DNA of 64,000 bases from IMGVR_UViG_3300025012_000026:62001-126000, one strand, 5' to 3'; numbered from the stretch's first letter, positions 16,864-55,747 are shown. Notes: generated from the letters alone by a model not told the origin. Made by a program: numbers and translations.

Positions 16864-16865
16864 TT

Positions 16866-17141
16866 ATGGAAGTTTTATTTAGGTATAGTGATTCTAATTT
16901 TTGCGCTTATTTAAATTATCTCGGATTTGAACATGTTGGGTTTGATATTGTAGAAAAAAGAGGGAATAAACCTAAAGTATTTTTACATTTTGAAGGAAAT
17001 AAAGAAGATTTTATTAATATTTATAAAAATTATAATTCTAATGATATTTCATTAAATCTTATAGAATTTGGTAAAAGTAAAAATAGTATTCTCAAAATTG
17101 TTCGAGAACACTTGGGAAACTATTTAAGAAGTAAGAAGTAA
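16866..17141 (+). CDS. DUF5659-like small protein
   Basis: SDSNFCAYLNYLGF...VFLHF pattern; AAGGAGG RBS. Confidence 0.55.
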   Translation: MEVLFRYSDSNFCAYLNYLGFEHVGFDIVEKRGNKPKVFLHFEGNKEDFINIYKNYNSNDISLNLIEFGKSKNSILKIVREHLGNYLRSKK

Positions 17142-17282
17142 AATAGGAATCTAATTTTGAAATCCCTATTCTAGCAAGAGTTTAAAGGTTTTAAAAATAA
17201 TATATTTTGCATATAAGTGTTTTCTTACTGCACCACATGCAGTTACTTTAGAAATACCCGTAAAAGCTTATAAAGGAAGGGG

Positions 17283-17942
17283 TTGCATTTGATTATGCCA
17301 ACTGATTTAGAAAAACAAATTGATATACAATGGCACAAACTTGATGATGATCGTTACGTTTATCTTCTTACAGGGGAATCGTTTAATAATTTAGAATATT
17401 TGGGAGCAGTTAAGAGAGAAATTGAAAATGCTCAGTTAAAAGATTTTCATGAACATTCAAAGTTGCTAAGAAAATATGGCATTGATGTAAATAGAAAAAT
17501 TAAAAACAAAGGTGATAAAACACCAATTGAAACAACATGTATTGCTTGGAAAGATACAAAGAAGGACTTATTCATTAAAGTATATAGAGGTGAAGGAGTC
17601 GAATTAATTATGAATAAGACATTGGATATTTTTGAAAAGGGATTTATGTTTACTATTCAGTCATTTGTTGAATTCAGAACAAATTGTGTAATTATAGACA
17701 GGGAATTCCCTACAGTAGAATATCTAGCAGAGTTAGCAGGTATGAGTCCTAGAAAGGCAAATGATATTATAAAGTCTTTAGAAAAGAAGAATATAATTAA
17801 GAGGTATAAAGATGGATTACATAAGAAAATATTTGTTAATCCTCATTATATGTGTGCAGGAGCGATTATTGAAGGTGAGATACCTTCTTATTTTGTGTCT
17901 GAAATAGAAGAAGAAACTATGGAATTATTTAATAGGCAATAA
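17283..17942 (+). CDS. RepL-like winged-helix protein
   Basis: LAELAGMSPRKANDIIKSLEKKNII...IFVNPHY. Confidence 0.6.
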   Translation: MHLIMPTDLEKQIDIQWHKLDDDRYVYLLTGESFNNLEYLGAVKREIENAQLKDFHEHSKLLRKYGIDVNRKIKNKGDKTPIETTCIAWKDTKKDLFIKVYRGEGVELIMNKTLDIFEKGFMFTIQSFVEFRTNCVIIDREFPTVEYLAELAGMSPRKANDIIKSLEKKNIIKRYKDGLHKKIFVNPHYMCAGAIIEGEIPSYFVSEIEEETMELFNRQ

Positions 17943-17967
17943 ATAAATTTGAGGAGGTCATTTAATT

Positions 17968-18732
17968 ATGAGCATGGGAATTTATAAAATAGAAAATATG
18001 ATTAATGGAAAAATATACGTAGGCAGTTCTAAAAATATAGAGAACAGATGGAGTCAACATAGAAGTTTATTAAAATCAGGAAAACATCACTCACAGCATT
18101 TGCAATATGCATGGGATAAATATAATGAAAGCAATTTCAAATTTGATATTATTGAAGACATGATTACACAAGAGGATTTATTTGTAAGAGAACAATATTG
18201 GATGGATAAATTACAATGTTATAATCCTAAAATTGGATATAATATTTCAATATTAGCTAATGCTTGTTTAATGAATGATAATTATGATTTTAAAGAAATT
18301 ATACAAGAAGAAAATGAATTAGCAAATAAACATAAAATAATATACATGATTATAGATAAGAAAAATGAAGAATTGATTTATAGAGGTATGCAGGATAGAT
18401 ATCTCGTTGAACATATATTTAGTGACTTTATATATTATCTATACAGATATTTTGAAAGTATTGATTTTAAATCTTTTGATAATATAATTCTATATACAGA
18501 TAAAGGGAATCTAACCATGAAAGATTTTCAAGGAATAAATACAGAAATATGCAAAGACAATATTTATAAATTAAACTTTAAAAAGGTTATTATTGAAAAT
18601 GGCCATGGAGGGCAAAGAGAAGTTCTTTATAAGAATAGTTTTGAGTTTTATGAAATAAAAGAAAGTAAAGACGGTTATATGACAATTAGGGTTTATGATG
18701 GTTTTGATGTAATAAACTATATACTTGAATAA
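17968..18732 (+). CDS. GIY-YIG endonuclease
   Basis: GIYKIENMINGKIYVGSS...R...EQYW...GYN. Confidence 0.9.
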   Translation: MSMGIYKIENMINGKIYVGSSKNIENRWSQHRSLLKSGKHHSQHLQYAWDKYNESNFKFDIIEDMITQEDLFVREQYWMDKLQCYNPKIGYNISILANACLMNDNYDFKEIIQEENELANKHKIIYMIIDKKNEELIYRGMQDRYLVEHIFSDFIYYLYRYFESIDFKSFDNIILYTDKGNLTMKDFQGINTEICKDNIYKLNFKKVIIENGHGGQREVLYKNSFEFYEIKESKDGYMTIRVYDGFDVINYILE

Positions 18733-18744
18733 AATAAAAAATAC

Positions 18745-18864
18745 TATACAGATGTTCAATTGCAGAATATTACTAATTGGATGTTAGGAGTCCAGATGAA
18801 GATTAAATATAAAACACTTTGTAAGAAATGTCATGCAACATCTCATGACAAAGGAGGAATATGA
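18745..18864 (+). pseudogene. HNH C-terminal fragment
   Basis: YTDVQLQ...TLCKKCHATSH without start/RBS; resembles the 12181-12565 domain. Confidence 0.5.
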
Positions 18865-19631
18865 TGATGATTATCAATAATATCAATGAGCAAAATGATA
18901 ATATACAGGATAACTTAGTTTATAAATTCTATAATATAAATAATGAATTGCTGTATGTTGGCATTACCAATAATATGAAAATTAGATTAAAGCAACACAA
19001 GCAGGACAAAGAATGGTTTGATGAAATTAAAAGAATATACATCACTGAAAAAATGACTAGAAATGAAGCTCATATTTATGAAATATTCTATATTGCAAAT
19101 GAAAATCCTTTATATAATATAGACTATATCAATGGTGGCAAAGTTGGTTTTGTGATAAGCGAATTATTATTCAAAGATTACAAGAAAGAGAGAAGAAAGA
19201 GGATAAACGTTGATATTGTTTTGAGAATGTATAATGAAGGTAAATCAATAGAGGAAATAGCCACAGAATTAAAATACTCTACTGAATACATTGCTAAAAA
19301 CTTGAGATCAAAATTAATAGAATTAAGGGAAGTTAAACCAAATCGTAGAAATGGGAAAAATGAAAGATTTGAAATGTTTGTTAATTGTCTTACATACTTG
19401 TCTAATAAAAAATATTTTACAATAGAAGATATTGTATATAAGTTCATGAATGATTATGAATGTACAGAGGAAACTGCAAAAACATATTATAAAGACGAGT
19501 TTGCAGTTTTACTTATTGAAGAGGTTAATAAAATAGGTTTGAAAAGAATTAGAGCGAATAAAGTTATTAAAGAGCAATTTGGAATGGATGGTGAAGGATA
19601 CCCCTTTATAATTTGCAAAGATGGTGAATAA
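18861..19631 (+). CDS. GIY-YIG domain protein with HTH
   Basis: VYKFYN...LYVGIT...RLKQH...E...PLYN; EIATELKYS. Confidence 0.8.
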   Translation: MMMIINNINEQNDNIQDNLVYKFYNINNELLYVGITNNMKIRLKQHKQDKEWFDEIKRIYITEKMTRNEAHIYEIFYIANENPLYNIDYINGGKVGFVISELLFKDYKKERRKRINVDIVLRMYNEGKSIEEIATELKYSTEYIAKNLRSKLIELREVKPNRRNGKNERFEMFVNCLTYLSNKKYFTIEDIVYKFMNDYECTEETAKTYYKDEFAVLLIEEVNKIGLKRIRANKVIKEQFGMDGEGYPFIICKDGE

Positions 19632-28691: not shown

Positions 28692-28793
28692 GTGACAACC
28701 TCCATTTCGACAATGATGGTTATATTATAGCATATTTAGTTGTTTTGTTCAAATTTGAGGTAATATGAAATTAATAAAATAATAAAAACAAAC

Positions 28794-31072: not shown

Positions 31073-32530
31073 TTAATTTTCCATTACATGATTGATAATT
31101 AAAGTGGCGATATCCTTCTGAACCTTTGAAGAATTCACAAGTTTCGATCCCTCCCTAAGACAGAAATTCCATATAGGATTACTCCTACTTAGAAATTTTT
31201 TGTCTGACAACTTTGTAAGTCTATTCTCCCAATCATTTTCCTTGCGTAATCTATTAGCAAGAGCAAAGAAACCTGATATAAACATATTTTCTAAAATAAA
31301 ATTCTGCTTTCTTTGTTCCGATTTTGCTTCAATATCAATATTGCCCATTGCTTCAGGGAATATATTACTAATTAATTCATCCCAAAATTTAACAAGATAT
31401 AAACCAATCTCTTCTGCTTCTTTTGGATTTAATGCTTTAAATTGTGCTACATTATCAAGTAGAGTTTTATAAGTGATAATTTTATTGCTTGATTTTGAAA
31501 TTGTTCCAGAAACTAACTCTATCTTACCTTTGAGCAAACTTTGATTCGCAATTATGTCAACAATTTTGCGATTTTCATTGAAAACATCATGAAAAGCCAA
31601 CCTAGTACGACTTACAGCCTTACCTTTTGAATTTGCTTCTACAAAAAGATTTTCTGACTCTGAGTGAGACAAATTAAAAATCACCACTGGTATATAAAAT
31701 TCTCTAGGATCTTTTATGCTAAGAGCATCCTTTTTGAATCGTTTAACCCAAATCTTCATACTTTCTAACCTATGGGCTGCATCGCAGATGGTTAAAGCAT
31801 GTTGTCCAGATAAAGTATTGTCATCTTCGTTAAAGTGAAGTGGTTCAGGATATTCTTTTGCATAATTTAATAATACTTGACCAGCATCCATAGAACCGTC
31901 TAACATTTTTGATAAGATAGTTTTAACATTGGCAGTATAAATTAATGGTTTTTCCTCTCCTTTTGCGGTGGTACGCGAACCTCTCTGAACTGAGGGATCG
32001 TATATCACTGAAGGAGTTTTTCCAGAGTACATTTCATTTAGTTGATAACAATTTAATGTTGTGATCCATTTGTAAATAGAACCATTACGATAAACGGGTT
32101 GGCAATTTGGTATTGACCAAAAATATCCATCTTCTTTATTATTGCTTTCTTTCCCAGTCTTAACCTTATTACTTAAACTACCAAACACAGGCATATTGGC
32201 ATTCCCCATATTTCTTTCTCTCATTTTTTTCTTTAGTTCTTCATCAGATTCTACAACTTTATCAATTTTATCAACTTCAATAATCTTATCACTCCTATCT
32301 TCTTCCCATTTTTCATCCTCATCAATAATTTCATCCAAACTTTCAAATCCTGCTGAAGTTTCACTCATAGTTTTGCTAAATTCTTGTGTCATCGTATTGA
32401 TTGCCTCTTCCTTAACTTGATTAACTACATTAGTGTTTGTCTGAGCAAGTCTGTCTCTACTTTTTCTTCCCATGTCTTCTTCTCCTTCCATAGTTTCCTT
32501 GACTAATTTATTAACCATATCAATAATCAT
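31073..32530 (-). CDS. DndB/DGQHR-family (ParB/Srx-fold) protein
   Basis: YDPSVQRG, ICDAAHRL (DGQHR variant), LFVEANSKGKAV. Confidence 0.7.
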   Translation of the reverse strand: MIIDMVNKLVKETMEGEEDMGRKSRDRLAQTNTNVVNQVKEEAINTMTQEFSKTMSETSAGFESLDEIIDEDEKWEEDRSDKIIEVDKIDKVVESDEELKKKMRERNMGNANMPVFGSLSNKVKTGKESNNKEDGYFWSIPNCQPVYRNGSIYKWITTLNCYQLNEMYSGKTPSVIYDPSVQRGSRTTAKGEEKPLIYTANVKTILSKMLDGSMDAGQVLLNYAKEYPEPLHFNEDDNTLSGQHALTICDAAHRLESMKIWVKRFKKDALSIKDPREFYIPVVIFNLSHSESENLFVEANSKGKAVSRTRLAFHDVFNENRKIVDIIANQSLLKGKIELVSGTISKSSNKIITYKTLLDNVAQFKALNPKEAEEIGLYLVKFWDELISNIFPEAMGNIDIEAKSEQRKQNFILENMFISGFFALANRLRKENDWENRLTKLSDKKFLSRSNPIWNFCLREGSKLVNSSKVQKDIATLIINHVMEN

Positions 32531-32636: not shown

Positions 32637-32804
32637 CTAATCAATAATTATCCCTTTTTCTCTTAGAAAATCCTCTTCTGCAAGTAATATTTCCTCAATA
32701 AGATTCTCGTTAACTCCTGTCCTTTGAGCAATTTGTTGAATCATAAGATCAACATCAATCGTCGGTTTGCTAAAACTATTGATGATGTTCCCTAAAATTC
32801 CCAT
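32637..32804 (-). CDS. 55-aa hypothetical protein, last gene of the transfer operon
   Basis: MGILGNIINSF...EEDFLREKGIIID; AAGGAG RBS overlaps the relaxase stop. Confidence 0.6.
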   Translation of the reverse strand: MGILGNIINSFSKPTIDVDLMIQQIAQRTGVNENLIEEILLAEEDFLREKGIIID

Positions 32805-32817
32805 TATAGCCATCTCC

Positions 32818-33591
32818 TTATTTCATTTTCCATACCGTGATATCTGGAATTATTCTTATCTTTTTCATATTTGGATATTGAGTAAAAATATAAAAATTTT
32901 CTCTTAATTCTTCTATTTGAGCGATGTTAACTTGTTTGCCTAAGTTAGTTAATCTTCTAAACCCTGCTGAATTAGTTAACCAAAACAATTGAGGAAACCC
33001 CTTTACCTTCTGAGATACTTTTTCGTAAATATCAATCTTTTCTTTCAGTTGTTTTTTAGATTCTGTCCCTGCGTCAATTTCAAATAACAAGGTGGTGTCT
33101 TGTTCATCCTTAGTTAACACAATCAATATATCTGATCTAAAAATATATTGCTTACCATTTTCTCTATCCTTGTATTTATAAATGAATTCAGGTTTATATT
33201 GCTTAATAAAAATCTTATTTAAATTTTGCTCCCGAATCAGCAAAGCATAAATTTCATTAACTAATAGTTGATGAGTATAATCTGAAGGTAGTTTAGATAA
33301 ATTCACTCCACCAATTTGGCAAAGTAATTTACCTGCCGTAACTAAGGATTCGCCATTTAATGCCACTGGAGTTCTTTTAATAAATTCTAATCTTTCTATT
33401 TTAGCTAGTCTTCGATTACAAACAGTTAAACTTTGTTTAGATTGAAAGAACATTATTTGAATCTGAGTTCTGGAAAAAATTTTAAAATCTCTAATACTTC
33501 TTATTATCTCTAAATCTCTCCCCGTTAAATGGGCGTACTTTTGTCCCAAAATCAATTTTTCCAACATCAAATCTTTGCTGATCATTGTCAA
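32818..33591 (-). CDS. Replication-relaxation (Replic_Relax) family protein, putative relaxase
   Basis: LTGRDLEII...SRTQI...CNRRLAKI wHTH; HQLLVNE; FRSDIL...FEIDAGTE...KIDIY. Confidence 0.8.
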   Translation of the reverse strand: MTMISKDLMLEKLILGQKYAHLTGRDLEIIRSIRDFKIFSRTQIQIMFFQSKQSLTVCNRRLAKIERLEFIKRTPVALNGESLVTAGKLLCQIGGVNLSKLPSDYTHQLLVNEIYALLIREQNLNKIFIKQYKPEFIYKYKDRENGKQYIFRSDILIVLTKDEQDTTLLFEIDAGTESKKQLKEKIDIYEKVSQKVKGFPQLFWLTNSAGFRRLTNLGKQVNIAQIEELRENFYIFTQYPNMKKIRIIPDITVWKMK

Positions 33592-35203
33592 TCACCTCTA
33601 TATTAAAATCTGGTTCGGGGATATAATCCGATTCCAAAATTTCTTCCATAATTTCATCAACAGAACGTAAATATTTTTGACTATTTTGATTAATAGCATC
33701 TGGTATTTGCTTGCGTAAAGGTTTGGTTGGAGGATCACATTTAATAATAGATATACTTTTTTCACTTTTGTATAAAAATCTACAGAGTGCATGATATTTA
33801 GGAAGATTAAGAATAGCATATCTGTTAGACATATCTTTTTCTTCATCTCCTGTTTCAAATTCTTTAAACAGTGTTTGTGCTCCTCCTCTACCTATAGCAA
33901 AAGATATAATCTGAGGTTGTACTTCTAACATCATTCTAATAAGTGATTGAATTTGAGTTTGTTCTGGAGACTGGAAGAAAAAATGTAAGCATAGTCGGTA
34001 TTTTCTTGCTTCTGTTAAAATTTCTTCAATTCCAGCCTCATTTGACAAATACATTTGGGGTTCGTCAAGAAAAAGCATGAAAATCCTCCTTTTATTTTTA
34101 TCTGTAATATCAAATCTTGATAAAGCTGCAATCCAAAACTTAGAAATAATTAGAGGGATCAGTATCTCAATATTAACTTTTCCGACAGCAACTTTTGGGG
34201 CTTTAATTAAAAGTATTTTTCCTTCATCCATTATCGTCCTGAAGTCAATAGTAGATTTGTTTTGACATATAATTGATTTCAAATAATCATTATTAGTAAG
34301 ATTTCCTACTTTGTTTAACAATGGTTTAATCATATCTCTTTTAACTGATGGAGGTTGGGCTTCAAATCTGTCCCAATATCTAACAACAGAAGCGTTCCTT
34401 TTGTTTTTTCTTAAAGACTTTACTATTTGTTCACGATATTCTACTTCAGTTAACATTTTGATAATTCCTAAAAGAGTTTTAGGATAATCAGTTTGTTTAA
34501 GAATCGCGTTCAATGAATTTGATAAAAGATCCTCACTTGCAAAACCTATTTGTTCTCCGAATCTTTTTTTGAAAAATGAAATTATCTCTGCATGAATAAA
34601 GTGGGGAAACTGTTTCTCAACTTTTTCATCAAATTCTAAGAGATTAATTCCTGGAAGAAAATCTTTATTGGAAAAGTCTAATAAAACAACATCCTCTAAT
34701 CTATTTTCTGGGATAGACATTAAAATATTGTCAATTAATGCTCCATCTGCTACGTCTATAACACAAAATCCTGCGGTATTGAAATTTTGTAAATTGTTAA
34801 TTTTAGATATTTGGATTGCAATATTTTCAGCCAAATTTGTCTTGCCACTCCCAGGTGAACCCACGTATATAGAATTTTTGCTAAGGTCGTCAAAATGATC
34901 TATAGGATAACTAATTACATTTTTTGTATTTAAATCTTTGCCCATTACTATACCATTACCTTTGAGTAAAAATTTACTAGGTTTTAACACTACCCTATCT
35001 CCTAACGAATTTTTATCATCGCCAAACTTCAAATTAGGTAATTTATAATCTGGAATACCTTGACCTAAAATACCATTTGAAATCATTTGAACTGTATAAC
35101 CAAGACATCCTAACACAAATTTACTGCTATATAGAGCAGAATATTTTCCTGATTTAATGGTTAAGTCTTTAATCTTATTAATTTTATCTCCCACTATACT
35201 CAA
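33491..35203 (-). CDS. Type IV coupling protein (VirD4/TraD-like ATPase)
   Basis: GSPGSGKT, VIDVADG, PLLNKV, IDFRTIMDEGKILL, LFLDEPQ...EARKYRL...Q. Confidence 0.85.
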   Translation of the reverse strand: MSIVGDKINKIKDLTIKSGKYSALYSSKFVLGCLGYTVQMISNGILGQGIPDYKLPNLKFGDDKNSLGDRVVLKPSKFLLKGNGIVMGKDLNTKNVISYPIDHFDDLSKNSIYVGSPGSGKTNLAENIAIQISKINNLQNFNTAGFCVIDVADGALIDNILMSIPENRLEDVVLLDFSNKDFLPGINLLEFDEKVEKQFPHFIHAEIISFFKKRFGEQIGFASEDLLSNSLNAILKQTDYPKTLLGIIKMLTEVEYREQIVKSLRKNKRNASVVRYWDRFEAQPPSVKRDMIKPLLNKVGNLTNNDYLKSIICQNKSTIDFRTIMDEGKILLIKAPKVAVGKVNIEILIPLIISKFWIAALSRFDITDKNKRRIFMLFLDEPQMYLSNEAGIEEILTEARKYRLCLHFFFQSPEQTQIQSLIRMMLEVQPQIISFAIGRGGAQTLFKEFETGDEEKDMSNRYAILNLPKYHALCRFLYKSEKSISIIKCDPPTKPLRKQIPDAINQNSQKYLRSVDEIMEEILESDYIPEPDFNIEVIDNDQQRFDVGKIDFGTKVRPFNGERFRDNKKY

Positions 35204-36695
35204 CCCCTTTCATTTCTTCGTAATTAGTGTTGAATAGAAGATATTCTTTATCATCAAATATTGGTCTAAAAGCATATTGCTTAGTTCCTATAGTCATCCA
35301 ACCTTGTCCTTTCTCAATTCTAGATAAGTAGTCAATAATGTGAGGTGGTATATTCATATAATTACTAATATGTTGCAACTCTAAAGAAGTTAAATGAAGA
35401 ATTAAAGTATTGGCACAATTTTTAATAATTAATTCAATATCATCCTTAGAGCAATCAGTGAGGTTCTGGGTGCAAACAAAAATGCCCACCCCTCTCTTAC
35501 GATAACCTTTAGCAATTGCTACAACTCTCTTAATTACTGCATCCGTTTTTAAAATATTCCATGCTTCATCAATTACAATAAGACAATCTTTAAATTCAGT
35601 TTTGAGTAAGAACTTTTCAAAATCCTTAGATATAATAACAATATTCCTTGAAGTTAATTTAGCATATTCACCAGTGATATCAAGAATATAAATTTTCTTA
35701 TGTGCAGATATTTTCTTTATAATTGACTTTACTGCAAAACTCTTGCCACTTCCTGAAATTCCAAAAATGAAAAATGAATTATTAAATGTCTCTGCAAAGT
35801 TAATTTTAATTAATTGATGGTTTTGATAATCATATCCAATAGTAATACCTTTGCCGGAAACATATCTTACAAATGGATAGAAATTACTAATTGCACTTGT
35901 TAAAAATACTTTTAACTCCTTTACATGATCAATTTCTTTGTATGCTCTGAAATTCTTGAAACAATTAAAATGTTCACAATTAGCAAACTTAAATCTTATC
36001 TGCATACCATCTAAAAGCATAGATATTTGCTTTGTTTTTGTTTCTAATTGTTCAAGTGTTTGTCCTTTAATTAAGATATATAATCCAACCATGCAAAGTT
36101 TTTCTTCATTTCCCATAAGATCAACCATTGTTTTTTGTAACTTCTCTACAATTTCATCTTCTACAAAAAACTCTTGATTTGGGTTCTTTGAGGCTTTCCA
36201 ATTTACATTTGCTTCAGTAGTATCAATTCTTTTTTTTACGGCCTTTACAGCCTCTTCTTGTGGCAATGGAAAGATAGTAATAGCAATCTCAGTGTCAGGA
36301 ATCATTAGATTGTTTATGAATCCCACAGAAAGCATTTGAGGATATTGGATAACTTTAATTAATTTAGCAAAATATTTTTCATTGTTTTCAGTGACAGAAA
36401 TATACTTCCTAAATTCTTTAATTTGGATATTGCTTGAAGTTGAACATTCAGATTGAGCATAGTCCATTCCCGAATTACGCAGGTTTTCACAAATATCAGA
36501 ATTGGTAATTAGATAATAACTTGATTCGTTTATTTGTGTATCTTTGTTTAAATAATTTAAATCAGTTTTACAAATTATCCTTGATGAATCATTTAGAGAA
36601 TTTAGCAAATATTTAAACTTGGATCTGAGTAATATTTGATCTTCTTTTGTTGCTAAAAGATAGTTTGCTTTTGGGTAAAGTTGATATTGAAACAT
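35184..36695 (-). CDS. virB4: VirB4-like conjugation ATPase (short form)
   Basis: YPQML..GF...FYPF N-domain; GISGSGKS; LIVIDEAW; RKRGVG...TQN. Confidence 0.85.
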   Translation of the reverse strand: MFQYQLYPKANYLLATKEDQILLRSKFKYLLNSLNDSSRIICKTDLNYLNKDTQINESSYYLITNSDICENLRNSGMDYAQSECSTSSNIQIKEFRKYISVTENNEKYFAKLIKVIQYPQMLSVGFINNLMIPDTEIAITIFPLPQEEAVKAVKKRIDTTEANVNWKASKNPNQEFFVEDEIVEKLQKTMVDLMGNEEKLCMVGLYILIKGQTLEQLETKTKQISMLLDGMQIRFKFANCEHFNCFKNFRAYKEIDHVKELKVFLTSAISNFYPFVRYVSGKGITIGYDYQNHQLIKINFAETFNNSFFIFGISGSGKSFAVKSIIKKISAHKKIYILDITGEYAKLTSRNIVIISKDFEKFLLKTEFKDCLIVIDEAWNILKTDAVIKRVVAIAKGYRKRGVGIFVCTQNLTDCSKDDIELIIKNCANTLILHLTSLELQHISNYMNIPPHIIDYLSRIEKGQGWMTIGTKQYAFRPIFDDKEYLLFNTNYEEMKGVEYSGR

Positions 36696-36960
36696 TTTGT
36701 TTTGTCATTCCTTTCCACTTAAATTTAAAGAAAGATACTACTCCTTGGTCTATATCTGTTTTCGTAAGAATTGCTGTAGGAATACCAATATTTGGTAATA
36801 TAAATAATTTTAAATAAATAGGTAAAGTTGTATTAAAAACCGATAATCCAAGTATAACCCCACCTATTAAATAAATAGTTTGTTTCCCTGTAAGTCCATA
36901 AAATATTTCATCCTTCATTTCAATAATTTGATTTGTGTCGAACATTTCAGTATTTAACAT
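36613..36960 (-). CDS. PrgI/VirB3-like membrane protein
   Basis: KDEIFYGLTGKQ plus two TMs, directly upstream of virB4. Confidence 0.75.
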   Translation of the reverse strand: MLNTEMFDTNQIIEMKDEIFYGLTGKQTIYLIGGVILGLSVFNTTLPIYLKLFILPNIGIPTAILTKTDIDQGVVSFFKFKWKGMTKQNVSISTLPKSKLSFSNKRRSNITQIQV

Positions 36961-36964
36961 TAAA

Positions 36965-37960
36965 TTACCTCCTTCTACTCGCTCCTCTTCTTGAAGACAT
37001 CATACCTCCCATTCTACCAAATCCACTATATCTAATAAGTTTTCTAGGGCTTAATCCATATTTTATCTCTCTAAACATAGCAACTGGATTCGGAGCTTGG
37101 TGTCCATAACTAATCCATTGTTGAACATATGAAGGTGCTTTTAGCATAAATGATCCTGCCGATATACAAAGCATAATATGATAAAGTCCTCCGTGATTTG
37201 ATTTTGATATTGAAGACTCAAATCCTAACCAAATCACCATAATAATCGCATGGATAATTGGAGCAATTAAGTTATCTAATAATTCATCAATCCATACCTG
37301 TCTCATATTTTGATGTTTGGGAAATAAACATAGATAGAAAAATATAGGTGCTGTAGCAACTAGAAACATAATAGAAATCATTCTCATGAAATAAAACCAT
37401 ATTAAATTGACTAATATCATTGCAAAAATTAAAGTGAATATAATTAGACCTAAACCATACTGTGGAGTTAAAGCTCTGACCATTTGTGCTTCTGAACCGC
37501 CTAGAGATAGAATAACAATGGTAAATTTGTTTGTTGCATCTATTATCATTGGAAGTGCAATTATTGCAATATTTACAATGACCATTGATTGAGCTATCTT
37601 CACAATATATTCTGTACTCTGATATTTACTACTTTTATTCATAATTTGCATAATTCCAAAATATACAATTCCTGCTATTGAGAATGTCATTATGATCTTT
37701 AAGAAGAAATAGTATAAAGATAATATTGTAGGATTTTCTGCCAATACATTAGGCGTGTGAAGAAATAATTGTGTAAAATTTTGAACTAGAGAATCAGTAA
37801 TAAAATGTTCTAATCTTCCATTTACTGTAGAAATATCTTGAGGTGTAGGTGCATTAAATAAAGCATCATTAACATTTTGAACTGTTTCTAGGGATGGAGG
37901 TGTGATAAAAAATTTAATTATAGCATCTCCTGCTTCTCCAACAGTGAGCAATGGAATCAT
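36965..37960 (-). CDS. VirB6/TrbL-like polytopic membrane protein
   Basis: Multiple TMs; YFMR...ATAPIFFYL...W pattern. Confidence 0.75.
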   Translation of the reverse strand: MIPLLTVGEAGDAIIKFFITPPSLETVQNVNDALFNAPTPQDISTVNGRLEHFITDSLVQNFTQLFLHTPNVLAENPTILSLYYFFLKIIMTFSIAGIVYFGIMQIMNKSSKYQSTEYIVKIAQSMVIVNIAIIALPMIIDATNKFTIVILSLGGSEAQMVRALTPQYGLGLIIFTLIFAMILVNLIWFYFMRMISIMFLVATAPIFFYLCLFPKHQNMRQVWIDELLDNLIAPIIHAIIMVIWLGFESSISKSNHGGLYHIMLCISAGSFMLKAPSYVQQWISYGHQAPNPVAMFREIKYGLSPRKLIRYSGFGRMGGMMSSRRGASRRR

Positions 37961-37990
37961 CCCCTTTATGAAGTTATAATAATTTTAATC

Positions 37991-38242
37991 TTAAAATTTT
38001 GGCATTGTTGGAAATACTCCTTTAAGTATTGTCCAGACAATCTTCACTACCCAAGGCCCAACAATTATAGTTATACATCCACGGATTACCGATTCCTTAA
38101 GCTCTTTGGATTGAGCTTTCCAATTTCCATTTCCAATGACATCCATGACACCAGCCCAGACTATCATGATCATAGCTAAACCAATTCCTAGTCCAGATAA
38201 TAATAAACAAATTTTTGTTGACCACTGGTTAAATTCTTCCAT
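37991..38242 (-). CDS. Pilin (VirB2/TrbC-like)
   Basis: 83 aa; two hydrophobic helices, IVWAG...K...IRG; first gene of the cluster; AGGAGG RBS. Confidence 0.7.
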   Translation of the reverse strand: MEEFNQWSTKICLLLSGLGIGLAMIMIVWAGVMDVIGNGNWKAQSKELKESVIRGCITIIVGPWVVKIVWTILKGVFPTMPKF

Positions 38243-38474
38243 GATAAAAACCTCCTAGAAATTTTAATTTTTCCATGCCTCTTTACTAAGAAGACCTAGA
38301 TTTTAAAATCTGAATCCCTTTATTCATGCGGTCTGTAGGGTTCAGGGTGTATTAATGGCAATATAGGTGGTTAATATAGGGTTCTTGTCTTGATTTTTAC
38401 AAACATTCATGTATAATCGACATTATTTTGGTTAATAATATGGTCAACGAAATAAATTAAGGAGTGTGAATTTA

Positions 38475-38576
38475 ATGTTTTTACTGCCAATGTTTGTTGT
38501 AGGAGTAGGTTTGGTGGGTTATTCAGCATATGAATTAGTTAATACAGTGCAACAATTAAGCAAACTTATTCAATAA
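38475..38576 (+). CDS. 33-aa single-TM peptide antisense to the transfer cluster
   Basis: MFLLPMFVVGVGLVGYSAYELVNTVQQLSKLIQ; AAGGAG RBS; TTGATT-16-TATAAT; terminator CCCCTCA/TGAGGGG. Confidence 0.65.
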   Translation: MFLLPMFVVGVGLVGYSAYELVNTVQQLSKLIQ

Positions 38577-38618
38577 TAAAATTCATATGCTATAATTCAA
38601 TCCCCTCATTTGAGGGGT

Positions 38619-38816
38619 TTATTTTTTAGCAAAATGCTTGATACTTTTGACAATTGATTCTTTAGACCAATATGCTCCAAAACCAAACATTAAAACTCCT
38701 AATGCGCCCATTGTCCATCCTAAAACCCAGTATGAAGGAGTAAGAAAAATCTCACCAAATTCTAATAGTGAAAAACTTCCAACTAAAAACATAAGAGCTT
38801 TTGTATCTTTTTTCAT
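38619..38816 (-). CDS. Small two-TM protein
   Basis: Hydrophobic 65 aa; AAGGAGG RBS. Confidence 0.6.
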   Translation of the reverse strand: MKKDTKALMFLVGSFSLLEFGEIFLTPSYWVLGWTMGALGVLMFGFGAYWSKESIVKSIKHFAKK

Positions 38817-38832
38817 AATAAGTCCTCCTTTT

Positions 38833-39414
38833 CTATTTGCTTTTAGCAGGTAAATAATTAATTGGATTTAATGAATTAGTTCCATTATTAGTACGAATTT
38901 CAAAATGTACATGTGGGCCTCTGGATAGTAATCCGGTATTTCCAGACAAAGCAATTACATCATTTTGATTTACTTTATCTCCAACGTTGACTAATAATTG
39001 ATTATTATGTGCATACACAGTCTGTTTTCCATCAGAATGATTGATATACACAACATTTCCAATCATTTCATTAAATTCTGCTTTAATTACTATGCCAAAA
39101 TTAGAGCAATAAACTTTACTATTTTCCACTACTGCAATATCAATTCCATAATGAAATCCATTTAATGAAGACTCTCTTGGGCCATAAGGACTTGAGATTA
39201 TTCCATCTACTGGATAAATATAATTAGAGGAAGAAGAAGTAAGCAATATATAAGTTTTATTAATGACAATGTTTAAGATACTTTTTGCTTCCTCTGTGGT
39301 CAACTCTCCTTTAGCTGAGACAGGATGAGGTATTGACAATAAAGTTAATAATAAAAGTGAAAATAATAGTTTTTTGCTTGGCTTGGGAATTAATTTTCCT
39401 TTTGTTTTTCTCAT
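38833..39414 (-). CDS. Secreted M23 peptidoglycan endopeptidase
   Basis: Signal peptide (VSA|); HYGID, YAH, GPHVHFE. Confidence 0.9.
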   Translation of the reverse strand: MRKTKGKLIPKPSKKLLFSLLLLTLLSIPHPVSAKGELTTEEAKSILNIVINKTYILLTSSSSNYIYPVDGIISSPYGPRESSLNGFHYGIDIAVVENSKVYCSNFGIVIKAEFNEMIGNVVYINHSDGKQTVYAHNNQLLVNVGDKVNQNDVIALSGNTGLLSRGPHVHFEIRTNNGTNSLNPINYLPAKSK

Positions 39415-39417
39415 AAT

Positions 39418-39630
39418 TCACTCTCTTATAAAATAAGGAGTCAAAACCAAATTCCCTTTATAACATTGATTTGCACTCATATAAACCTTTCTCCAACCTC
39501 TCGTCATTAAATCTTCATAAAATTTTCTTTTATAATTCACAAAATCATCAACACTATCAAATTCCAAATGATTAATAATGTCATGGATTCTACGACCTTT
39601 ATTAACCATTATTGATAATTTAATTCTCAT
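39418..39630 (-). CDS. Hypothetical protein
   Basis: AAGGAGG RBS. Confidence 0.55.
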   Translation of the reverse strand: MRIKLSIMVNKGRRIHDIINHLEFDSVDDFVNYKRKFYEDLMTRGWRKVYMSANQCYKGNLVLTPYFIRE

Positions 39631-41040: not shown

Positions 41041-41295
41041 TTAATCGTCAAACATATTAAAATTGATTTCTTTTACTGGTTTTGTTTTAGATCGCTCTTC
41101 CATTCTAATTTCATCTTTTTTAACAAATACATCTATATAGATTTCCTCTTCATCCTCTAACATTACCTTATCTTCACCTTTAAAAAAATAATCATACAAA
41201 GCTCTTCTAATTACTTTGCTTCTCCTATTCTTAGGGATTGCATCAAGAAATGGTTTTAAGATTCTGTCGTCTCTAAAGTTTCTAATTTCCCCCAT
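41041..41295 (-). CDS. ParR-like ribbon-helix-helix adaptor
   Basis: IRNFR...FLDAIPKNRRSKVIRRAL; overlaps the parM end. Confidence 0.7.
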   Translation of the reverse strand: MGEIRNFRDDRILKPFLDAIPKNRRSKVIRRALYDYFFKGEDKVMLEDEEEIYIDVFVKKDEIRMEERSKTKPVKEINFNMFDD

Positions 41296-42146
41296 GATAG
41301 ATTCTTCACCAACTTTTCTGCCCCTCTTACATTTGAGAATTGACCTTTATGAAGTATTTTTTGAGGCCAATTAAGAAAATGATATATAGCAGACCCTCCT
41401 CCTCCAGTAACGATTATCTTGTCAATTTTCTTTAAATCATAAAAGGTTGATACATCTGCCTTGATTAATGTTGCAATGTCTGGGTAAAAATTCGCCAATG
41501 AGTCATAACCATCATATAAATCTACTTCATATATTTTTCTATCAGCACGTTTATAGATTTGCCACATTCCATTATTTGTAGTTTTGCAAAGTTCTCTAAC
41601 TATTTCACCTCTGAGTAAATAAATTAGATTTACAGTACCCATTCCTACATCAACGATTAAAGTAACATTAGGAATTTCTTCTTTAGTTTTGCCCTCATCA
41701 TCAAGAAAATAATCCATTGACGCACAATATCCCTGTGGGAGACTTTTTATAAGTGTCGGTTTAAAGTTATGAATATGCTCAATATCCCCAATTTTATAAT
41801 TAATATCCATATCATGAGAAAACATATCAATAATTGATTTTTTTTCACTAAAATAAGATTCAAATGGAAAAAGAAATACTACTTTGTCTTCATTTTTATA
41901 GTTACATAAGGTATATTTAGTAAGAATTTTGAATGTTGATTGCTCTGTTTTAATTCCTTCAAGTGAATAATCTTGAGCATACCCATGTAAAATTGCATCT
42001 TCTCCAATGTAATGATTATCAATAACCCACATTTTCTTTTCAGTAAAAGAATCTTGATATTTCCCTATGACAGAAAGAATCTTTAATTCCCTGCCTTTTG
42101 AATTTAACGCCTTCACATATGAATTACCACAGTCCAAAAACAGCAT
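41256..42146 (-). CDS. parM: ParM/StbA actin-like partition ATPase
   Basis: LDCGNSYVK, LPQG, VDVGMGT, TGGGG, SNVRG; ATG 42146 after AAGGAGG. Confidence 0.88.
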   Translation of the reverse strand: MLFLDCGNSYVKALNSKGRELKILSVIGKYQDSFTEKKMWVIDNHYIGEDAILHGYAQDYSLEGIKTEQSTFKILTKYTLCNYKNEDKVVFLFPFESYFSEKKSIIDMFSHDMDINYKIGDIEHIHNFKPTLIKSLPQGYCASMDYFLDDEGKTKEEIPNVTLIVDVGMGTVNLIYLLRGEIVRELCKTTNNGMWQIYKRADRKIYEVDLYDGYDSLANFYPDIATLIKADVSTFYDLKKIDKIIVTGGGGSAIYHFLNWPQKILHKGQFSNVRGAEKLVKNLSWGKLETLETTES

Positions 42147-42162
42147 ATTTACTCCTCCTTTG

Positions 42163-42209
42163 ATTTGTAATACAATTGTAAGACATTGTCTTACAATTGT
42201 ATTACAAAT
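42163..42209. promoter_or_regulatory. 47-bp palindrome, candidate parC centromere/operator
   Basis: ATTTGTAATACAATTGTAAGACA-T-TGTCTTACAATTGTATTACAAAT (perfect 23-bp arms) next to the parM RBS. Confidence 0.7.
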
Positions 42210-43736: not shown

Positions 43737-43878
43737 AATCTAATCCTCCTCTTTCTATAAATTATTATATTTCTCCCTACTTAATATTATAGCATAAATA
43801 GTAAATCATGTCAACATATATTTATTTTATAATTTAATAATTTTCTCTATCCCTTTCAGTGTTGTCCGGCCCAAACAC

Positions 43879-51546: not shown

Positions 51547-52861
51547 TTGAACTTCACACGAATTAATTAGTGTGATTCTTAATTCATTGACCAGACTAAC
51601 GCCCAATCTCCTTAAGCTAACCCTGTAGTTCCTACAGTTTTTATTAATTATGCTATTAACTTCAATCCTTCATTTCTAATATTAATAGCAGCATTTATGT
51701 CTCTATTATGACTACTGCCACATTCTGGGCATTTCCATTCCCTAACACTTAAATCTAAATCAACATATTTCCATCCACAAACATGACAAAGTTTACTACT
51801 AGCAAAATATCTATCCACAACAGAAATTTCTCTACCATACCAAATTGCTTTATAATTCAACATTGTAGTAAAACTATACCATGAAGCATCTGATATACTT
51901 TTCGCTAATTTATGATTCTTCTTCATTCCTTCAATATTAAGATCCTCTAGGCAAATAACTTGATTTTCATTGATAAGTCTAGTTGATAATTTTTGAAGAA
52001 AGTCCTTCCTAGTATTAGTAATTTTCTCATGAAGTCTAGCCACTTTAATTCTTGCCTTGTTTCTATTTTTACTACCCTTTTTCTTCTTAGATAGTTTTCT
52101 TTGAAGTTTTACTAATTTATCTTCATATTTACGATAATATTTTGGATTATCAATAATTTCACATTCAGATGTAATAGCAAAATCTTTAATTCCCAAATCA
52201 ATACCAATATTTATTTCTGATTTAGGTAATTTAATAGGCTCTGGCACTTCGCAAAGAATAGAGATAAAATATTTACCACTAGGAACCTGAGATATTGTTA
52301 CATTTTTAATTATTCCAATTACTTCTCTTGATTTAGCAAATTTAACTAAACCAAGTTTAGGAAGTTTAATTCTATTGCTTTCGATTCTAATATTATTATT
52401 TGTAAAAGTAGTACGATAAGACTTTCTATTATCTTTTTTAGATTTGAATTTTGGAAAACCTTGATTATTATTACCTTTCTTAATTTCTCTAAAGAAATTC
52501 TGATAAGCTAAGTCTAAGTTTTTAAGAGTTTGTTGGAGAGATATACTATCAATTTCTTTAAGTCATTCAAATTCTTTTTTAAGTTGAGGTAGGAGAATAG
52601 CACATTGATTATATGTTAAAGTTTGATGATTTTCTTTATACATCTCGATCCTTTTATCTAGAAAGTAATTATAGATGAATCTATTTGAACCTAAATGTTT
52701 ATTGATTAAAATTGTTTGCTCTTTGTTTGGGTATAGTCTGAATTTGAATGTTTTAAGCAATTGATACTCACCTCCAATATTTATTTATTATATCAAATTT
52801 TTAACTGATTTGTTAACAATTTATCTCATGACTGAAGTCACGGATGTTCTTGTTGTCCACC
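51547..52861 (-). mobile_element. IS200/IS605-family tnpB-only (IS1341-type) element
   Basis: Inserted 3' of TTAT; left-end hairpin CCGTGACTTCAGTCATGAG; right end CACAC/GTGTG hairpin ending TTCAA. Confidence 0.85.
51648..52760 (-). pseudogene. tnpB: tnpB with one in-frame TGA (52563-65)
   Basis: KTFKFRLYPN...KKEFE*LKEID (W expected)...GIDLG, LEDL, NRDINAA in one frame. Confidence 0.9.
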
Positions 52862-54958: not shown

Positions 54959-55747
54959 TTAAATCCTTTCACATTTACATACTCCATCTTTATAACTTTC
55001 ACAGGGAATTATTTTTCCATCACACATCACAACTAATTTTTCTATTCCTGCTGTACATTTCCCATGTGATAAAGGAAGACCTAACTTGACAACATCTTTA
55101 TATTTAGTATATAAATGATCCATTTGCTCCTTTAAGATTCTATCATCTAATATTAAATATTGGTTGTTAACGCATCTCCCTTGATTAACTAGTTTTAATA
55201 GATTTATCTTTTTCACACCTAAATTAATCAAATAATCTATTGTTTCTTCTAGTGTATAAATATTAATTGTCATTGGAACTATATGAACTTCGACATTCAT
55301 ATTAGTTTTTAATGAATATCTTAAATTAGATAAGACAGTAGAATATAAATCTTTGTTTGCAATAAAGTTAAATATATTGTTTCTATTGCTGTAAAAGGGA
55401 AAAACAATTGTATTAATATATTTGTCAAATGATAATTTTTTTATATCATTACCCCACCATCCATCTCCAGAGGTATACATTTTTACTTTTACATTTTTAG
55501 TTTGTAGATATTCTAACAGATTATAAATATCTGGATATAATAATGGTTCTCCTCCGCTAAGATTTACCCATTCTGGATCGTATTTGTCAATAGTTTCTTT
55601 TATTATGTTAATATCTAATTTATCTAGCTCGTCATTATAGTTAGAACTTGCATTAGTAGAGCAATGCAGACAATTATTAAAACATTTATTAGTTAGTTCA
55701 AACGTTATCTCTTTTATATTGATCAACTCCTTTTCAAATGTCAACAA
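54959..55747 (-). CDS. Radical SAM protein with twitch-like C-terminus
   Basis: CFNNCLHC; SGGEPL; CTAG...DG..IPC. Confidence 0.9.
   Translation of the reverse strand: MLTFEKELINIKEITFELTNKCFNNCLHCSTNASSNYNDELDKLDINIIKETIDKYDPEWVNLSGGEPLLYPDIYNLLEYLQTKNVKVKMYTSGDGWWGNDIKKLSFDKYINTIVFPFYSNRNNIFNFIANKDLYSTVLSNLRYSLKTNMNVEVHIVPMTINIYTLEETIDYLINLGVKKINLLKLVNQGRCVNNQYLILDDRILKEQMDHLYTKYKDVVKLGLPLSHGKCTAGIEKLVVMCDGKIIPCESYKDGVCKCERI

What the first reader, a model, noticed from the sequence alone, without database searches (positions are those of the whole stretch)
32637..39414. A minimal conjugation machine on a tailed-phage genome: candidate conjugative phage-plasmid
Seen: co-oriented M23 hydrolase, pilin, VirB6-like, PrgI-like, VirB4, VirD4-like coupling protein and Replic_Relax-type relaxase, all with intact frames. 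The same contig carries tail fibres, endolysin/holin, ParMR and a plasmid-type Rep, and no integrase in this window. Established: these are the core parts of Gram-positive T4SS conjugation; phage-plasmids generally spread as virions and rarely carry intact transfer systems; Replic_Relax proteins are not among the classical HUH MOB classes. Inference: the element may spread both as a virion and by cell-cell transfer, using a non-canonical relaxase that standard conjugation typing could miss.
Basis: partly seen in the sequence, partly recalled or inferred. Interest (0 to 1): 0.88.

Follow-up and report, generated by a model that had tools for sequence, protein, structure and literature searches.

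The report
Secretion-type DNA transfer genes in phage
A roughly 230-kb tailed phage from groundwater carries an intact, conserved set of conjugation-type (type IV secretion) genes; related sets occur in well-known Bacillus phages, so they look like a long-standing phage module of unknown role, not proof that this phage conjugates.

Summary
Seven co-oriented, intact genes at 32.8-39.4 kb encode an M23 wall hydrolase, a VirB2-like hairpin protein, a VirB6/TrbL-like protein, a PrgI/VirB3-like protein, a short VirB4-like ATPase, a soluble VirD4/TrwB-like ATPase and a Replic_Relax nuclease. All seven are under purifying selection (dN/dS 0.07-0.31).

The replicon is a real SPbeta-like siphophage. 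Portal, terminase, YonB, YonD, tail tube and tape-measure genes lie on the same contigs. The layout recurs in many independent assemblies. No integrase, tRNA or att-like repeat bounds the block.

Two points change the reading.
- Replic_Relax is the classical MOB_C relaxase class, which CONJscan already covers, so it is not a relaxase that typing overlooks.
- The module is not unique to this phage. The whole set is in Bacillus phage G and a G-like contig. SPO1-like phages carry the ATPase plus nuclease (plus ParM), and SPP1 carries gp31.1-gp32, which are non-essential. SPbeta has none of it.

The module is therefore an old one shared by phages and plasmids. No VirB8-like protein, no membrane anchor on the coupling protein and no oriT were found.

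Conjugation-like export of phage DNA is my leading mechanism, but it is unproven (about 0.4). "Conjugative phage-plasmid" is partly supported.

The parts
39418..39630 (-). 70-aa soluble ORF at the head of the cluster, function unknown
   Evidence: No family hit. A 70-aa ORF holds the same position in the 47%-identity relative L025.
38833..39414 (-). Secreted or anchored M23 peptidoglycan endopeptidase, playing the VirB1/CwlT-type wall-opening role
   Evidence: Pfam Peptidase_M23 2.8e-27. N-terminal hydrophobic anchor, with HxxxD and HxH motifs present. dN/dS about 0.2.
38619..38816 (-). 65-aa small membrane protein with two hydrophobic segments
   Evidence: Hydropathy. No family hit.
37991..38242 (-). 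83-aa two-TM hairpin, VirB2/TrbC-like 'pilin'
   Evidence: T4SS_pilin E=9.5e-4 and TrbC E=6e-3, both below gathering cut-off. Three of four orthologues hit T4SS_pilin. Two TM segments. dN/dS 0.09-0.16.
36965..37960 (-). 331-aa polytopic membrane protein, VirB6/TrbL-like channel component
   Evidence: At least 4 TM segments. hhalign 95.5% probability, E=1.5e-8, to phage G gp153, which passes Pfam TrbL_4 at 44 bits. One of four orthologues hits TrbL at E=0.008. phrog_3750 at 3e-6.
36613..36960 (-). 115-aa PrgI/VirB3-like small membrane protein
   Evidence: PrgI at 24.8 bits against a cut-off of 27. Four of four orthologues hit PrgI. Lies directly upstream of the VirB4-like gene, as in conjugation loci.
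35184..36695 (-). Short VirB4-like ATPase (474-503 aa depending on the start codon)
   Evidence: DUF87 at 44.7 bits, above cut-off, and P-loop_TraG. NCBIfam conju_CD1110 1e-31 (110 bits against a cut-off of 325) and CedB 2.6e-13. PDB 4ag5 VirB4 1e-4. Best database hit is phage G gp155, 26% identity over 77%. Walker A and B residues are invariant. dN/dS about 0.11.
33491..35203 (-). Soluble VirD4/TrwB-like coupling-protein-type ATPase (567-570 aa) without an N-terminal membrane anchor
   Evidence: Homologues at 30-33% identity carry PF10412, PF12696 and PF02534. Family profile hits DotL 2.9e-6 and TrwB 3.3e-6. The AF2 model matches VirB4, HerA, DotL, TrwB and Cag-beta folds. phrog_5156 at 1.6e-70. 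No N-terminal TM segment. dN/dS 0.07-0.10.
32818..33591 (-). Replic_Relax (MOB_C-class) nuclease: winged helix plus PD-(D/E)XK core
   Evidence: Pfam PF13814 at 46.3 bits, above cut-off. phrog_9381 at 3e-15. The AF2 model shows a wHTH followed by an alpha-beta-beta-beta-alpha-beta core, with weak Foldseek hits to Can2, EndoMS and BamHI nucleases and to MarR. Invariant residues H107, E113, E135, D154, E171, D173, K185.
32637..32804 (-). 55-aa ORF after the nuclease, conserved in close relatives; possible accessory protein
   Evidence: 54-56-aa ORFs occupy the same position in L002, L015 and L016. No family assignment.
41041..42209 (-). ParMRC-like locus upstream in the same leftward gene array: parC-like 4 x 11-nt palindromic array (42163-42209), ParM-like actin (41256-42146) and an 84-aa ORF (41041-41295)
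   Evidence: ALP_N 1.4e-6. NCBIfam ParM 1.3e-10. PDB ParM 3js6. Repeats and terminator. Homologous to CP-51 gp96 'partition protein' at 5.8e-7.

Best explanation
The block is a functional type-IV-secretion-type DNA-translocation module that resides in, and has long evolved with, a large SPbeta-like tailed phage. It belongs to a family of such modules shared by Firmicutes phages and plasmids. The set is complete here, in phage G and in G-like contigs, and is reduced in SPO1-like and SPP1-like phages.

Proposed mechanism; every step is inferred, none is shown:
1. The MOB_C-type nuclease binds through its winged helix and nicks the phage replicon at a still unknown site.
2. The soluble TrwB-like ATPase docks the DNA onto a membrane channel built from the VirB6-like, PrgI-like and small hairpin proteins.
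3. The short VirB4-like ATPase powers that channel.
4. The secreted M23 hydrolase opens the wall locally.
5. One strand of phage DNA passes to an adjoining cell without a virion.

This would happen either from a plasmid-like prophage held by the neighbouring ParMRC-like locus, or from an infected cell.
For: - Gene content and order match the conserved core of Gram-positive conjugation loci: hydrolase, VirB2-, VirB6-, VirB3- and VirB4-like proteins, coupling protein and relaxase.
- Catalytic motifs are intact.
- All seven genes have dN/dS of 0.07-0.31 at dS up to about 1.9.
- Order is conserved down to 37-47% protein identity in L025.
- A Bacillus velezensis plasmid carries the same kit beside ParM.
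- Large Clostridium plasmids that hold the nearest plasmid homologues of the ATPase transfer by conjugation in experiments (PMC2884020 and PMC5814558).
- MOB_C relaxases are established conjugative nickases (PMC12857230).
- The phage context is solid: portal and terminase are on the same contigs.
Against: - No VirB8/TcpC/PrgL-like protein, adhesin or oriT was found.
- The coupling-protein homologue has no membrane anchor.
- The VirB4 homologue is 474-503 aa and scores far below every equivalog cut-off.
- Related modules sit in phages regarded as virulent, in early or replication regions, and SPP1 gp31.2 and gp32 are dispensable in the laboratory. A role inside the lytic cycle is therefore at least as natural.
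- The fold search cannot tell a coupling protein from VirB4 or HerA.
- There are no transfer data for any phage copy.
Confidence: 0.4

Rival explanations
1. The same machine serves the infection cycle inside one cell, or one sporangium, and does not spread the genome between cells. An early-expressed envelope translocon could pull in or exclude DNA, secrete a protein or DNA, or move phage DNA across a septum, for example into a forespore.
For: - Homologues occur in phages regarded as virulent: SPP1 gp32 with the membrane proteins gp31.1 and gp31.2 in an early operon, SPO1-like phages and phage G.
- In L025 the module abuts DnaB, primase, a sigma factor and PolA. In the window it is co-oriented with nucleotide-metabolism genes.
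- The ATPases give weak hits to the archaeal DNA-import proteins CedB and CedD.
- Nearly all phage hits are from spore-forming Firmicutes.
Against: A relaxase-class nuclease coupled to a coupling-protein-type ATPase is the signature of DNA export by conjugation. SPP1 loses nothing obvious without gp31.2 and gp32. No direct evidence exists for any of these roles.
Confidence: 0.3
2. The core pair acts in replicon maintenance. Replic_Relax is a nicking replication initiator and the TrwB-like ATPase is a DNA pump or resolvase partner. They work with the ParM-like segregation system, and the membrane proteins only anchor the complex.
For: - GenBank and PHROG label the phage homologues 'replication initiation by nicking'.
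- ParM-like gene, ATPase and nuclease are linked in the window, in CP-51 and in a Bacillus plasmid, and a TubZ-like gene lies beside the module in L035.
- The Pfam family is named for both replication and relaxation (PMC3424549).
Against: This does not explain conserved VirB4-, VirB6-, VirB3- and VirB2-like proteins and a secreted wall hydrolase under purifying selection. The replication label is an annotation, not an experiment.
Confidence: 0.15
3. The block is foreign to the phage: an ICE, IME or plasmid fragment recently inserted, or joined by mis-assembly.
For: Conjugation-type genes are rare in phage-plasmids (PMC10879196). SPbeta itself has none of these genes.
Against: - The layout is identical on at least 8 contigs from different samples and assemblers.
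- The portal 43-mer and the ATPase gene are on the same two contigs of more than 227 kb.
- GC content is uniform at about 29-30%.
- There is no integrase, tRNA or flanking direct repeat.
- The nearest database relatives of the VirB4-like protein are phage proteins, not plasmid ones.
- The module is conserved in diverged relatives.
Confidence: 0.03
4. The genes are a decaying remnant without function, or the VirB4-like protein is a packaging ATPase, as the PHROG label 'terminase large subunit' suggests.
For: phrog_2666 is labelled terminase large subunit. Both ATPases are truncated relative to their plasmid homologues.
Against: dN/dS is 0.07-0.31 for all seven genes. Motifs are intact. A separate YonF-type terminase, 36.5% identical to SPbeta YonF, sits with the portal gene.
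Confidence: 0.04

Closest known systems
Gram-positive conjugative T4SS (pCF10 Prg/Pcf, Tn916/ICEBs1 type; VirB4 of the CD1110 family)
   Same: VirB4-, VirB6/TrbL-, PrgI/VirB3- and VirB2-like proteins, a wall hydrolase, a coupling-protein-type ATPase and a relaxase in one co-oriented cluster.
   Different: No VirB8/PrgL/TcpC-like protein or adhesin was detected. The coupling protein lacks TM helices. The VirB4 homologue is about 500 aa and scores 110 bits against a cut-off of 325. The cluster lies on a tailed-phage genome.
MOB_C relaxases (TraX of pAD1; Pfam Replic_Relax PF13814)
   Same: The Pfam hit is above cut-off, and the architecture is an N-terminal winged helix plus a PD-(D/E)XK core (PMC12857230).
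   Different: No oriT, bind-site repeats or nicking activity are known here. The phage homologues are annotated as replication initiators.
Bacillus phage G gp146, gp149-gp156 and the G-like contig L035
   Same: The whole set is present: Replic_Relax, T4SS_pilin, TrbL_4, a small membrane protein, a VirB4-like ATPase and a TrwB-like ATPase, with the VirB6-VirB3-VirB4-coupling order the same.
   Different: Identity is only 22-27%. The G version of the coupling protein is 825-832 aa with an N-terminal DUF8128 domain. Its nuclease is on the opposite strand, and it has a PhageMetallopep gene instead of the M23 peptidase.
SPP1 gp31.1/gp31.2/gp32 and SPO1-like CP-51 gp90/gp91/gp96
   Same: These phages carry homologous TrwB-like ATPases (tblastn 1e-9 to 3e-30). 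CP-51 also has the Replic_Relax and ParM-like genes nearby. The SPP1 authors already proposed a membrane translocon (PMC6316719).
   Different: By BLASTP, CP-51 gp96 and gp91 show no similarity to the window's VirB6-like and VirB4-like proteins. tblastn of those two proteins found nothing else in the CP-51 or SPP1 loci. These phages are regarded as virulent.
Bacillus velezensis plasmid NZ_CP116015.1 (67 kb) and similar Bacillus/Clostridium plasmids
   Same: ParM/StbA, a 942-aa TrwB-like ATPase, a replication-relaxation protein, a 'conjugal transfer protein', a PrgI-family protein and an 848-aa ATPase lie in one region.
   Different: Gene order differs, with the coupling protein and relaxase first. 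The proteins are longer. Only the coupling protein gives a significant tblastn match to the window, at 24% identity. MOB-suite types the plasmid as non-mobilizable.
Phage-plasmids (P1, N15, SSU5 and similar)
   Same: Virion genes and a plasmid-type partition locus on one replicon.
   Different: Known phage-plasmids rarely carry even a relaxase or an oriT (PMC10879196). For this element, extrachromosomal maintenance and a plasmid replication initiator are not shown.

Membership tests
Conjugative T4SS of Gram-positive bacteria (VirB4-based mating-pair formation) | VirB4-family ATPase | tested here: met
   DUF87 at 44.7 bits, above cut-off; conju_CD1110 1e-31; PDB VirB4 4ag5. Membership holds at superfamily level only, because the score is far below the equivalog cut-offs.
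Conjugative T4SS of Gram-positive bacteria (VirB4-based mating-pair formation) | Coupling protein (VirD4/TrwB family) with an N-terminal membrane anchor | tested here: inconclusive
   The ATPase core is related to TrwB and DotL through homologues and a family profile. No N-terminal TM helix is present. The fold search does not separate it from VirB4 or HerA.
Conjugative T4SS of Gram-positive bacteria (VirB4-based mating-pair formation) | VirB6/TrbL-like polytopic channel protein | tested here: met
   There is no direct Pfam hit. hhalign gives 95.5% probability to phage G gp153, which passes TrbL_4. One of four orthologues hits TrbL.
Conjugative T4SS of Gram-positive bacteria (VirB4-based mating-pair formation) | VirB3/PrgI-like protein next to VirB4 | tested here: inconclusive
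   PrgI scores 24.8 bits against a cut-off of 27. All four orthologues hit PrgI at E<=0.05 (best 3.3e-5). Position and two TM segments fit.
Conjugative T4SS of Gram-positive bacteria (VirB4-based mating-pair formation) | VirB8-like (PrgL/TcpC/ConB) scaffold protein | tested here: not met
   No ORF in 32.6-40.9 kb gives such a hit, and none has a TM segment plus a domain of about 130 aa.
Conjugative T4SS of Gram-positive bacteria (VirB4-based mating-pair formation) | Cell-wall hydrolase | tested here: met
   M23 peptidase with a signal/anchor and intact metal-binding motifs.
Conjugative T4SS of Gram-positive bacteria (VirB4-based mating-pair formation) | oriT and demonstrated transfer | not testable with these tools
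   Only generic inverted and direct repeats were found. There are no experimental data.
MOB_C relaxases (Replic_Relax) | Match to PF13814 above the curated cut-off | tested here: met
   46.3 bits against a cut-off of 25.3. PF13814 corresponds to CONJscan MobC (PMC5357655).
MOB_C relaxases (Replic_Relax) | N-terminal winged helix plus PD-(D/E)XK catalytic core with conserved acidic and lysine residues | tested here: met
   AF2 model with pLDDT 76, and invariant residues E113, D154, E171, D173 and K185.
MOB_C relaxases (Replic_Relax) | Site-specific nicking at an oriT | not testable with these tools
Phage-plasmid | Complete virion gene set on the replicon | tested here: met
   Terminase (YonF-like, 5e-35), portal (phrog_2739, 1e-48), YonB, YonD, YomU tube, tape measure and tail fibres. 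The portal 43-mer is on the window's own contig.
Phage-plasmid | Plasmid partition system | tested here: met
   ParM-like gene with an upstream 4 x 11-nt repeat array and a downstream 84-aa ORF. A ParM-like gene is also present in the SPO1-like phage CP-51, so this feature is not specific to plasmids.
Phage-plasmid | Plasmid-type replication initiator and absence of an integration module in the whole genome | tested here: inconclusive
   Only a DnaA_N domain protein was found. No integrase appears in the 64-kb window or among the Pfam hits listed for the roughly 40 kb upstream, but about 125 kb of the contig is unseen.
SPbeta-like siphophages | Yon/Yom structural gene families in SPbeta order | tested here: met
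   YonG_N, the YonF homologue, YonD_N, YonB, YomX, YomW, YomV, YomU and YomN are in the same order as in NC_001884.
ICE/IME inserted in a phage | Integrase and flanking att repeats | tested here: not met
   None was found.

The most novel reading that the evidence does not exclude
Tailed phages of Firmicutes, including ones treated as strictly virulent, carry an old T4SS-derived apparatus that lets the phage genome move from cell to cell without a virion. The route could run along chains, within biofilms, or across the sporulation septum. This roughly 230-kb phage and phage G would hold the self-sufficient version, and SPO1-like and SPP1-like phages reduced versions.
Probability: 0.2. Interest if true: 0.9.

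Novelty: new variant of a known kind. Interest (0 to 1): 0.62.

Why it matters
If the module works as a DNA conduit, some phages have a second, receptor-independent way to reach new cells. That would change how host range, phage resistance and gene flow are understood for Firmicutes phages. It would also blur the line between phages and conjugative elements more than phage-plasmids already do.

Even without that, the finding links scattered notes into one family present in over a hundred sequenced Bacillus phages. Those notes are the unexplained 'translocon' of SPP1, 'VirB-like' gp155 of phage G and 'replication initiation by nicking' in SPO1-like phages. Laboratory models therefore exist in which its function can be tested.

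The data also show that plasmids carrying this type of coupling protein are mostly typed as non-mobilizable.

Tried and rejected
- Megablast of the block against phage and plasmid collections found nothing.
- tblastn of the nuclease and of the VirB6-like protein against phages gave no database-wide hit. Their links to phage G rest on profile and pairwise comparisons.
- Two scans of species-representative genomes found no close relative, so the host was not identified. A CW_binding_2 protein upstream and 29% GC only suggest a clostridial host.
- Foldseek on the ATPase model matches VirB4, HerA, DndH, DotL and TrwB about equally, so fold alone does not assign it.
- The tree of the ATPase family places the window clade with CP-51 and SPP1, but on very long branches, so I give it little weight.
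- The search for an oriT found no convincing repeats near the nuclease gene.
- No VirB8-like candidate was found.
- SPbeta itself has no homologue of any module protein.
- I judged the PHROG labels 'terminase large subunit' and 'Zot-like' for the VirB4-like protein to reflect P-loop-level or annotation artefacts, because a YonF-type terminase exists.

Full report
**What is there**

The window has about 29% GC throughout, with no compositional break at the block. Between 32.6 and 39.6 kb, ten co-oriented minus-strand ORFs form a tight cluster. Seven of them can be assigned.

- M23 peptidase, 38833-39414: Pfam 2.8e-27, with a hydrophobic N-terminus and both metal-binding motifs.
- 83-aa two-helix hairpin, 37991-38242: weak T4SS_pilin and TrbC hits.
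- 331-aa polytopic protein, 36965-37960: no direct family hit.
- 115-aa protein, 36613-36960: just under the PrgI cut-off.
- ATPase of about 500 aa, 35184-36695: DUF87, P-loop_TraG and AAA_10 hits. Its best curated match is the VirB4-like CD1110 family at 1e-31, and it has a PDB hit to VirB4.
- 570-aa ATPase, 33491-35203: no direct Pfam hit.
- Replic_Relax protein, 32818-33591: above the Pfam cut-off.

I tested the weak assignments on orthologues from three diverged relatives: L015, L016 and L025. All four PrgI-like proteins hit PrgI. Three of four hairpins hit T4SS_pilin, and one of four polytopic proteins hits TrbL.

The polytopic protein aligns to phage G gp153 with 95.5% hhalign probability, and gp153 itself passes TrbL_4.

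The 570-aa ATPase has hundreds of homologues at 30-33% identity that carry TrwB_AAD_bind, TraG-D_C and T4SS-DNA_transf domains. A profile of the family finds DotL and TrwB first in the PDB. An AlphaFold model has a confident core at residues 110-420. It matches VirB4, HerA, DotL, TrwB and Cag-beta about equally, so the fold confirms the superfamily but not the subfamily. The protein has no N-terminal membrane helices.

The nuclease model shows a winged helix followed by an alpha-beta-beta-beta-alpha-beta core, with invariant acidic and lysine residues. That is the architecture described for MOB_C relaxases (PMC12857230; PMC3424549).

All seven genes have dN/dS between 0.07 and 0.31 against relatives with dS up to about 1.9. 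They are maintained by selection.

**Is it a phage, and is the contig sound?**

The window comes from a 230,300-bp JGI contig that is also an IMG/VR entry. The same gene layout, at 100% protein identity, appears on contigs of 34, 59, 68, 158 and 227 kb from other samples. An ENA contig of 268 kb shares the upstream tail and head region. Diverged copies at 88%, 82% and 47% identity keep the gene order.

Walking upstream of the window, I found these genes:

- a 1609-aa tape-measure gene, and YomN, YomU (tail tube), YomV, YomW and YomX;
- YonB and YonD;
- a portal gene (phrog_2739, 1e-48);
- a 606-aa protein whose C-terminus is 36.5% identical to the SPbeta terminase YonF (5e-35), and YonG.

They lie in the same order as in SPbeta. 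A 43-nt stretch of the portal gene occurs on the window's own contig and on the 227-kb contig, and both also hold the ATPase gene.

Inside the window there are tail and tail-fibre genes and an endolysin. There is also a large nucleotide-metabolism set: RNR, ThyX, dCMP deaminase and several kinases. No tRNA, integrase or att-like direct repeat flanks the block.

Chimeric assembly, an inserted ICE and a head-less tailocin plasmid are therefore all excluded or very unlikely.

**What changes the interpretation**

First, Replic_Relax is not outside the classical scheme. PF13814 is the MOB_C class in CONJscan (PMC5357655). Its prototype is TraX of pAD1, a PD-(D/E)XK enzyme with an N-terminal winged helix (PMC12857230).

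Second, the module is not special to this element.

- The best database match of the VirB4-like protein is gp155 of Bacillus phage G.
- Phage G has, in one 10-kb stretch, a Replic_Relax protein (gp146), a T4SS_pilin protein (gp150), a TrbL_4 protein (gp153), a small membrane protein (gp154), the VirB4-like gp155 and the TrwB-like gp156.
- A metagenomic G-like contig repeats this arrangement beside a TubZ-like gene.
- The TrwB-like ATPase has tblastn matches in 118 phage records. Almost all are Bacillus phages, including SPO1-like myoviruses, SPP1 and GBK2.
- In CP-51 the ATPase (gp91) is followed by a Replic_Relax gene (gp90), with a ParM-like gene (gp96) that is homologous to the window's five genes upstream of gp91.
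- In SPP1 the homologue is gp32. The revisited-genome paper reports it as early, non-essential, similar to TrwB, VirB4 and FtsK, and possibly forming a translocon with the membrane proteins gp31.1 and gp31.2, with function unknown (PMC6316719).
- Bacillus pumilus siphoviruses were noted to carry TrbC/VirB2, Replic_Relax and FtsK-like genes (PMC9658697).
- SPbeta itself has no homologue of any module protein. The module is therefore accessory to the SPbeta-like backbone.

That phage G, the SPO1-like phages and SPP1 are virulent rests on my own knowledge and on the SPP1 paper. I did not test it.

Third, plasmids carry relatives too.

- The ATPase matches 177 plasmid records. MOB-suite types most of them as non-mobilizable.
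- A 67-kb Bacillus velezensis plasmid shows ParM/StbA, a 942-aa homologue, a replication-relaxation protein, a 'conjugal transfer protein', a PrgI-family protein and an 848-aa ATPase in one region.
- The top plasmid hits are large Clostridium botulinum group I and C. sporogenes plasmids. That plasmid family transfers by conjugation in experiments (PMC2884020, PMC5814558).

**How it most likely works**

The parts list is that of a DNA-transfer machine:

- a site-specific nickase;
- a hexameric coupling-type ATPase;
- a VirB4-type motor;
- a VirB6/VirB3/VirB2-type membrane assembly;
- a wall hydrolase.

The simplest reading is that the machine nicks the phage replicon and pushes one strand across the envelope into an adjoining cell. 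The adjacent ParMRC-like locus, with a perfect palindrome of four 11-nt units 17 nt before the ParM-like start, fits a plasmid-like resident state.

All of this is inference. Several facts count against a standard conjugation system:

- no VirB8-like protein was found;
- the coupling protein has no membrane anchor;
- the VirB4 homologue is short;
- no oriT is recognisable;
- homologous modules lie in early or replication regions of phages that do not lysogenise.

I therefore put conjugation-like transfer at about 0.4, an infection-cycle translocon with another purpose at about 0.3, and a replication or segregation role for the core pair at about 0.15.

**Novelty and score**

Pieces of this were noted before, in the SPP1 paper, in the phage G annotation and in the Bacillus pumilus phage paper. 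I found no paper that treats the module as one family or reports a complete set on an SPbeta-like phage. The recent T4SS nomenclature review does not mention phages at all.

I rate it a new variant of a known kind. The question it raises is open and can be tested in laboratory phages. The relaxase is not unusual, the module is widespread and is not a one-off fusion, and conjugation is not demonstrated.

Noticed in passing
window 10822-12118 (+) and 56330-57347 (-); also 51648-52247 (-): Two IS605-type TnpB genes are each followed by a RAGATH-18 RNA motif (70.5 and 48.4 bits), i.e. TnpB with its guide-RNA-type element. A third, shorter TnpB-like ORF has no RNA hit.
   Followed up: partly
window 38390-38617 (+): A plus-strand mini-gene sits inside the minus-strand cluster. 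It has a promoter-like site, a 36-aa strongly hydrophobic ORF (38466-38576) and a clean terminator-like hairpin. It resembles a type I toxin-like peptide gene.
   Followed up: no
window 42163-42209: A perfect 23-nt palindrome made of four 11-nt units (TTGTAATACAA) lies 17 nt upstream of the ParM-like start. It is a candidate parC or operator.
   Followed up: partly
window 31073-32530 (-): A DndB-like (DGQHR) 485-aa gene lies directly after the module. Genes of 566 and 506 aa hold the same position in L015 and L016. Together with a radical-SAM/QueE-like gene at 54959-55747, this may point to DNA modification.
   Followed up: no
window 14644-19631; L020 2410-3327: The window has a dense set of homing-endonuclease-type genes: HNH, DUF559 and two GIY-YIG. 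Another GIY-YIG gene lies between the portal and YonD genes of the head module.
   Followed up: no
window 58515-61781 (-): The ribonucleotide reductase large-subunit ORF is 1088 aa, long for the family. It may hold an intein, as in SPbeta bnrdE.
   Followed up: no
window 28722-28740 and 43784-43802: A near-identical 19-nt motif overlies the -10 regions upstream of two leftward operons: the XRE-type regulator gene, and the operon made of the 501-aa gene and the ParM-like gene. This suggests shared regulation.
   Followed up: no
one search hit list (P0015-P0120): The nearest non-phage relatives of the TrwB-like ATPase (30-33% identity) include many proteins that their sources name as Patescibacteria (CPR) or DPANN-type archaeal; most carry no source name. 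Many have an N-terminal DUF8128 or a C-terminal CxxC-x17-CxxC domain. They are closer to the window protein than the Bacillus phage or plasmid homologues are.
   Followed up: partly
summary; L034: Of 177 plasmids carrying a homologue of the TrwB-like ATPase, MOB-suite types 136 as non-mobilizable and only 1 as conjugative. At least one 'non-mobilizable' Bacillus plasmid has a full T4SS-like gene set.
   Followed up: partly
L035 1891-3018: A TubZ/tubulin-like gene lies beside the phage-G-like copy of the module. A ParM-like gene lies beside it in the window, in CP-51 and in the Bacillus plasmid. The link between cytoskeletal segregation genes and this module therefore recurs.
   Followed up: partly
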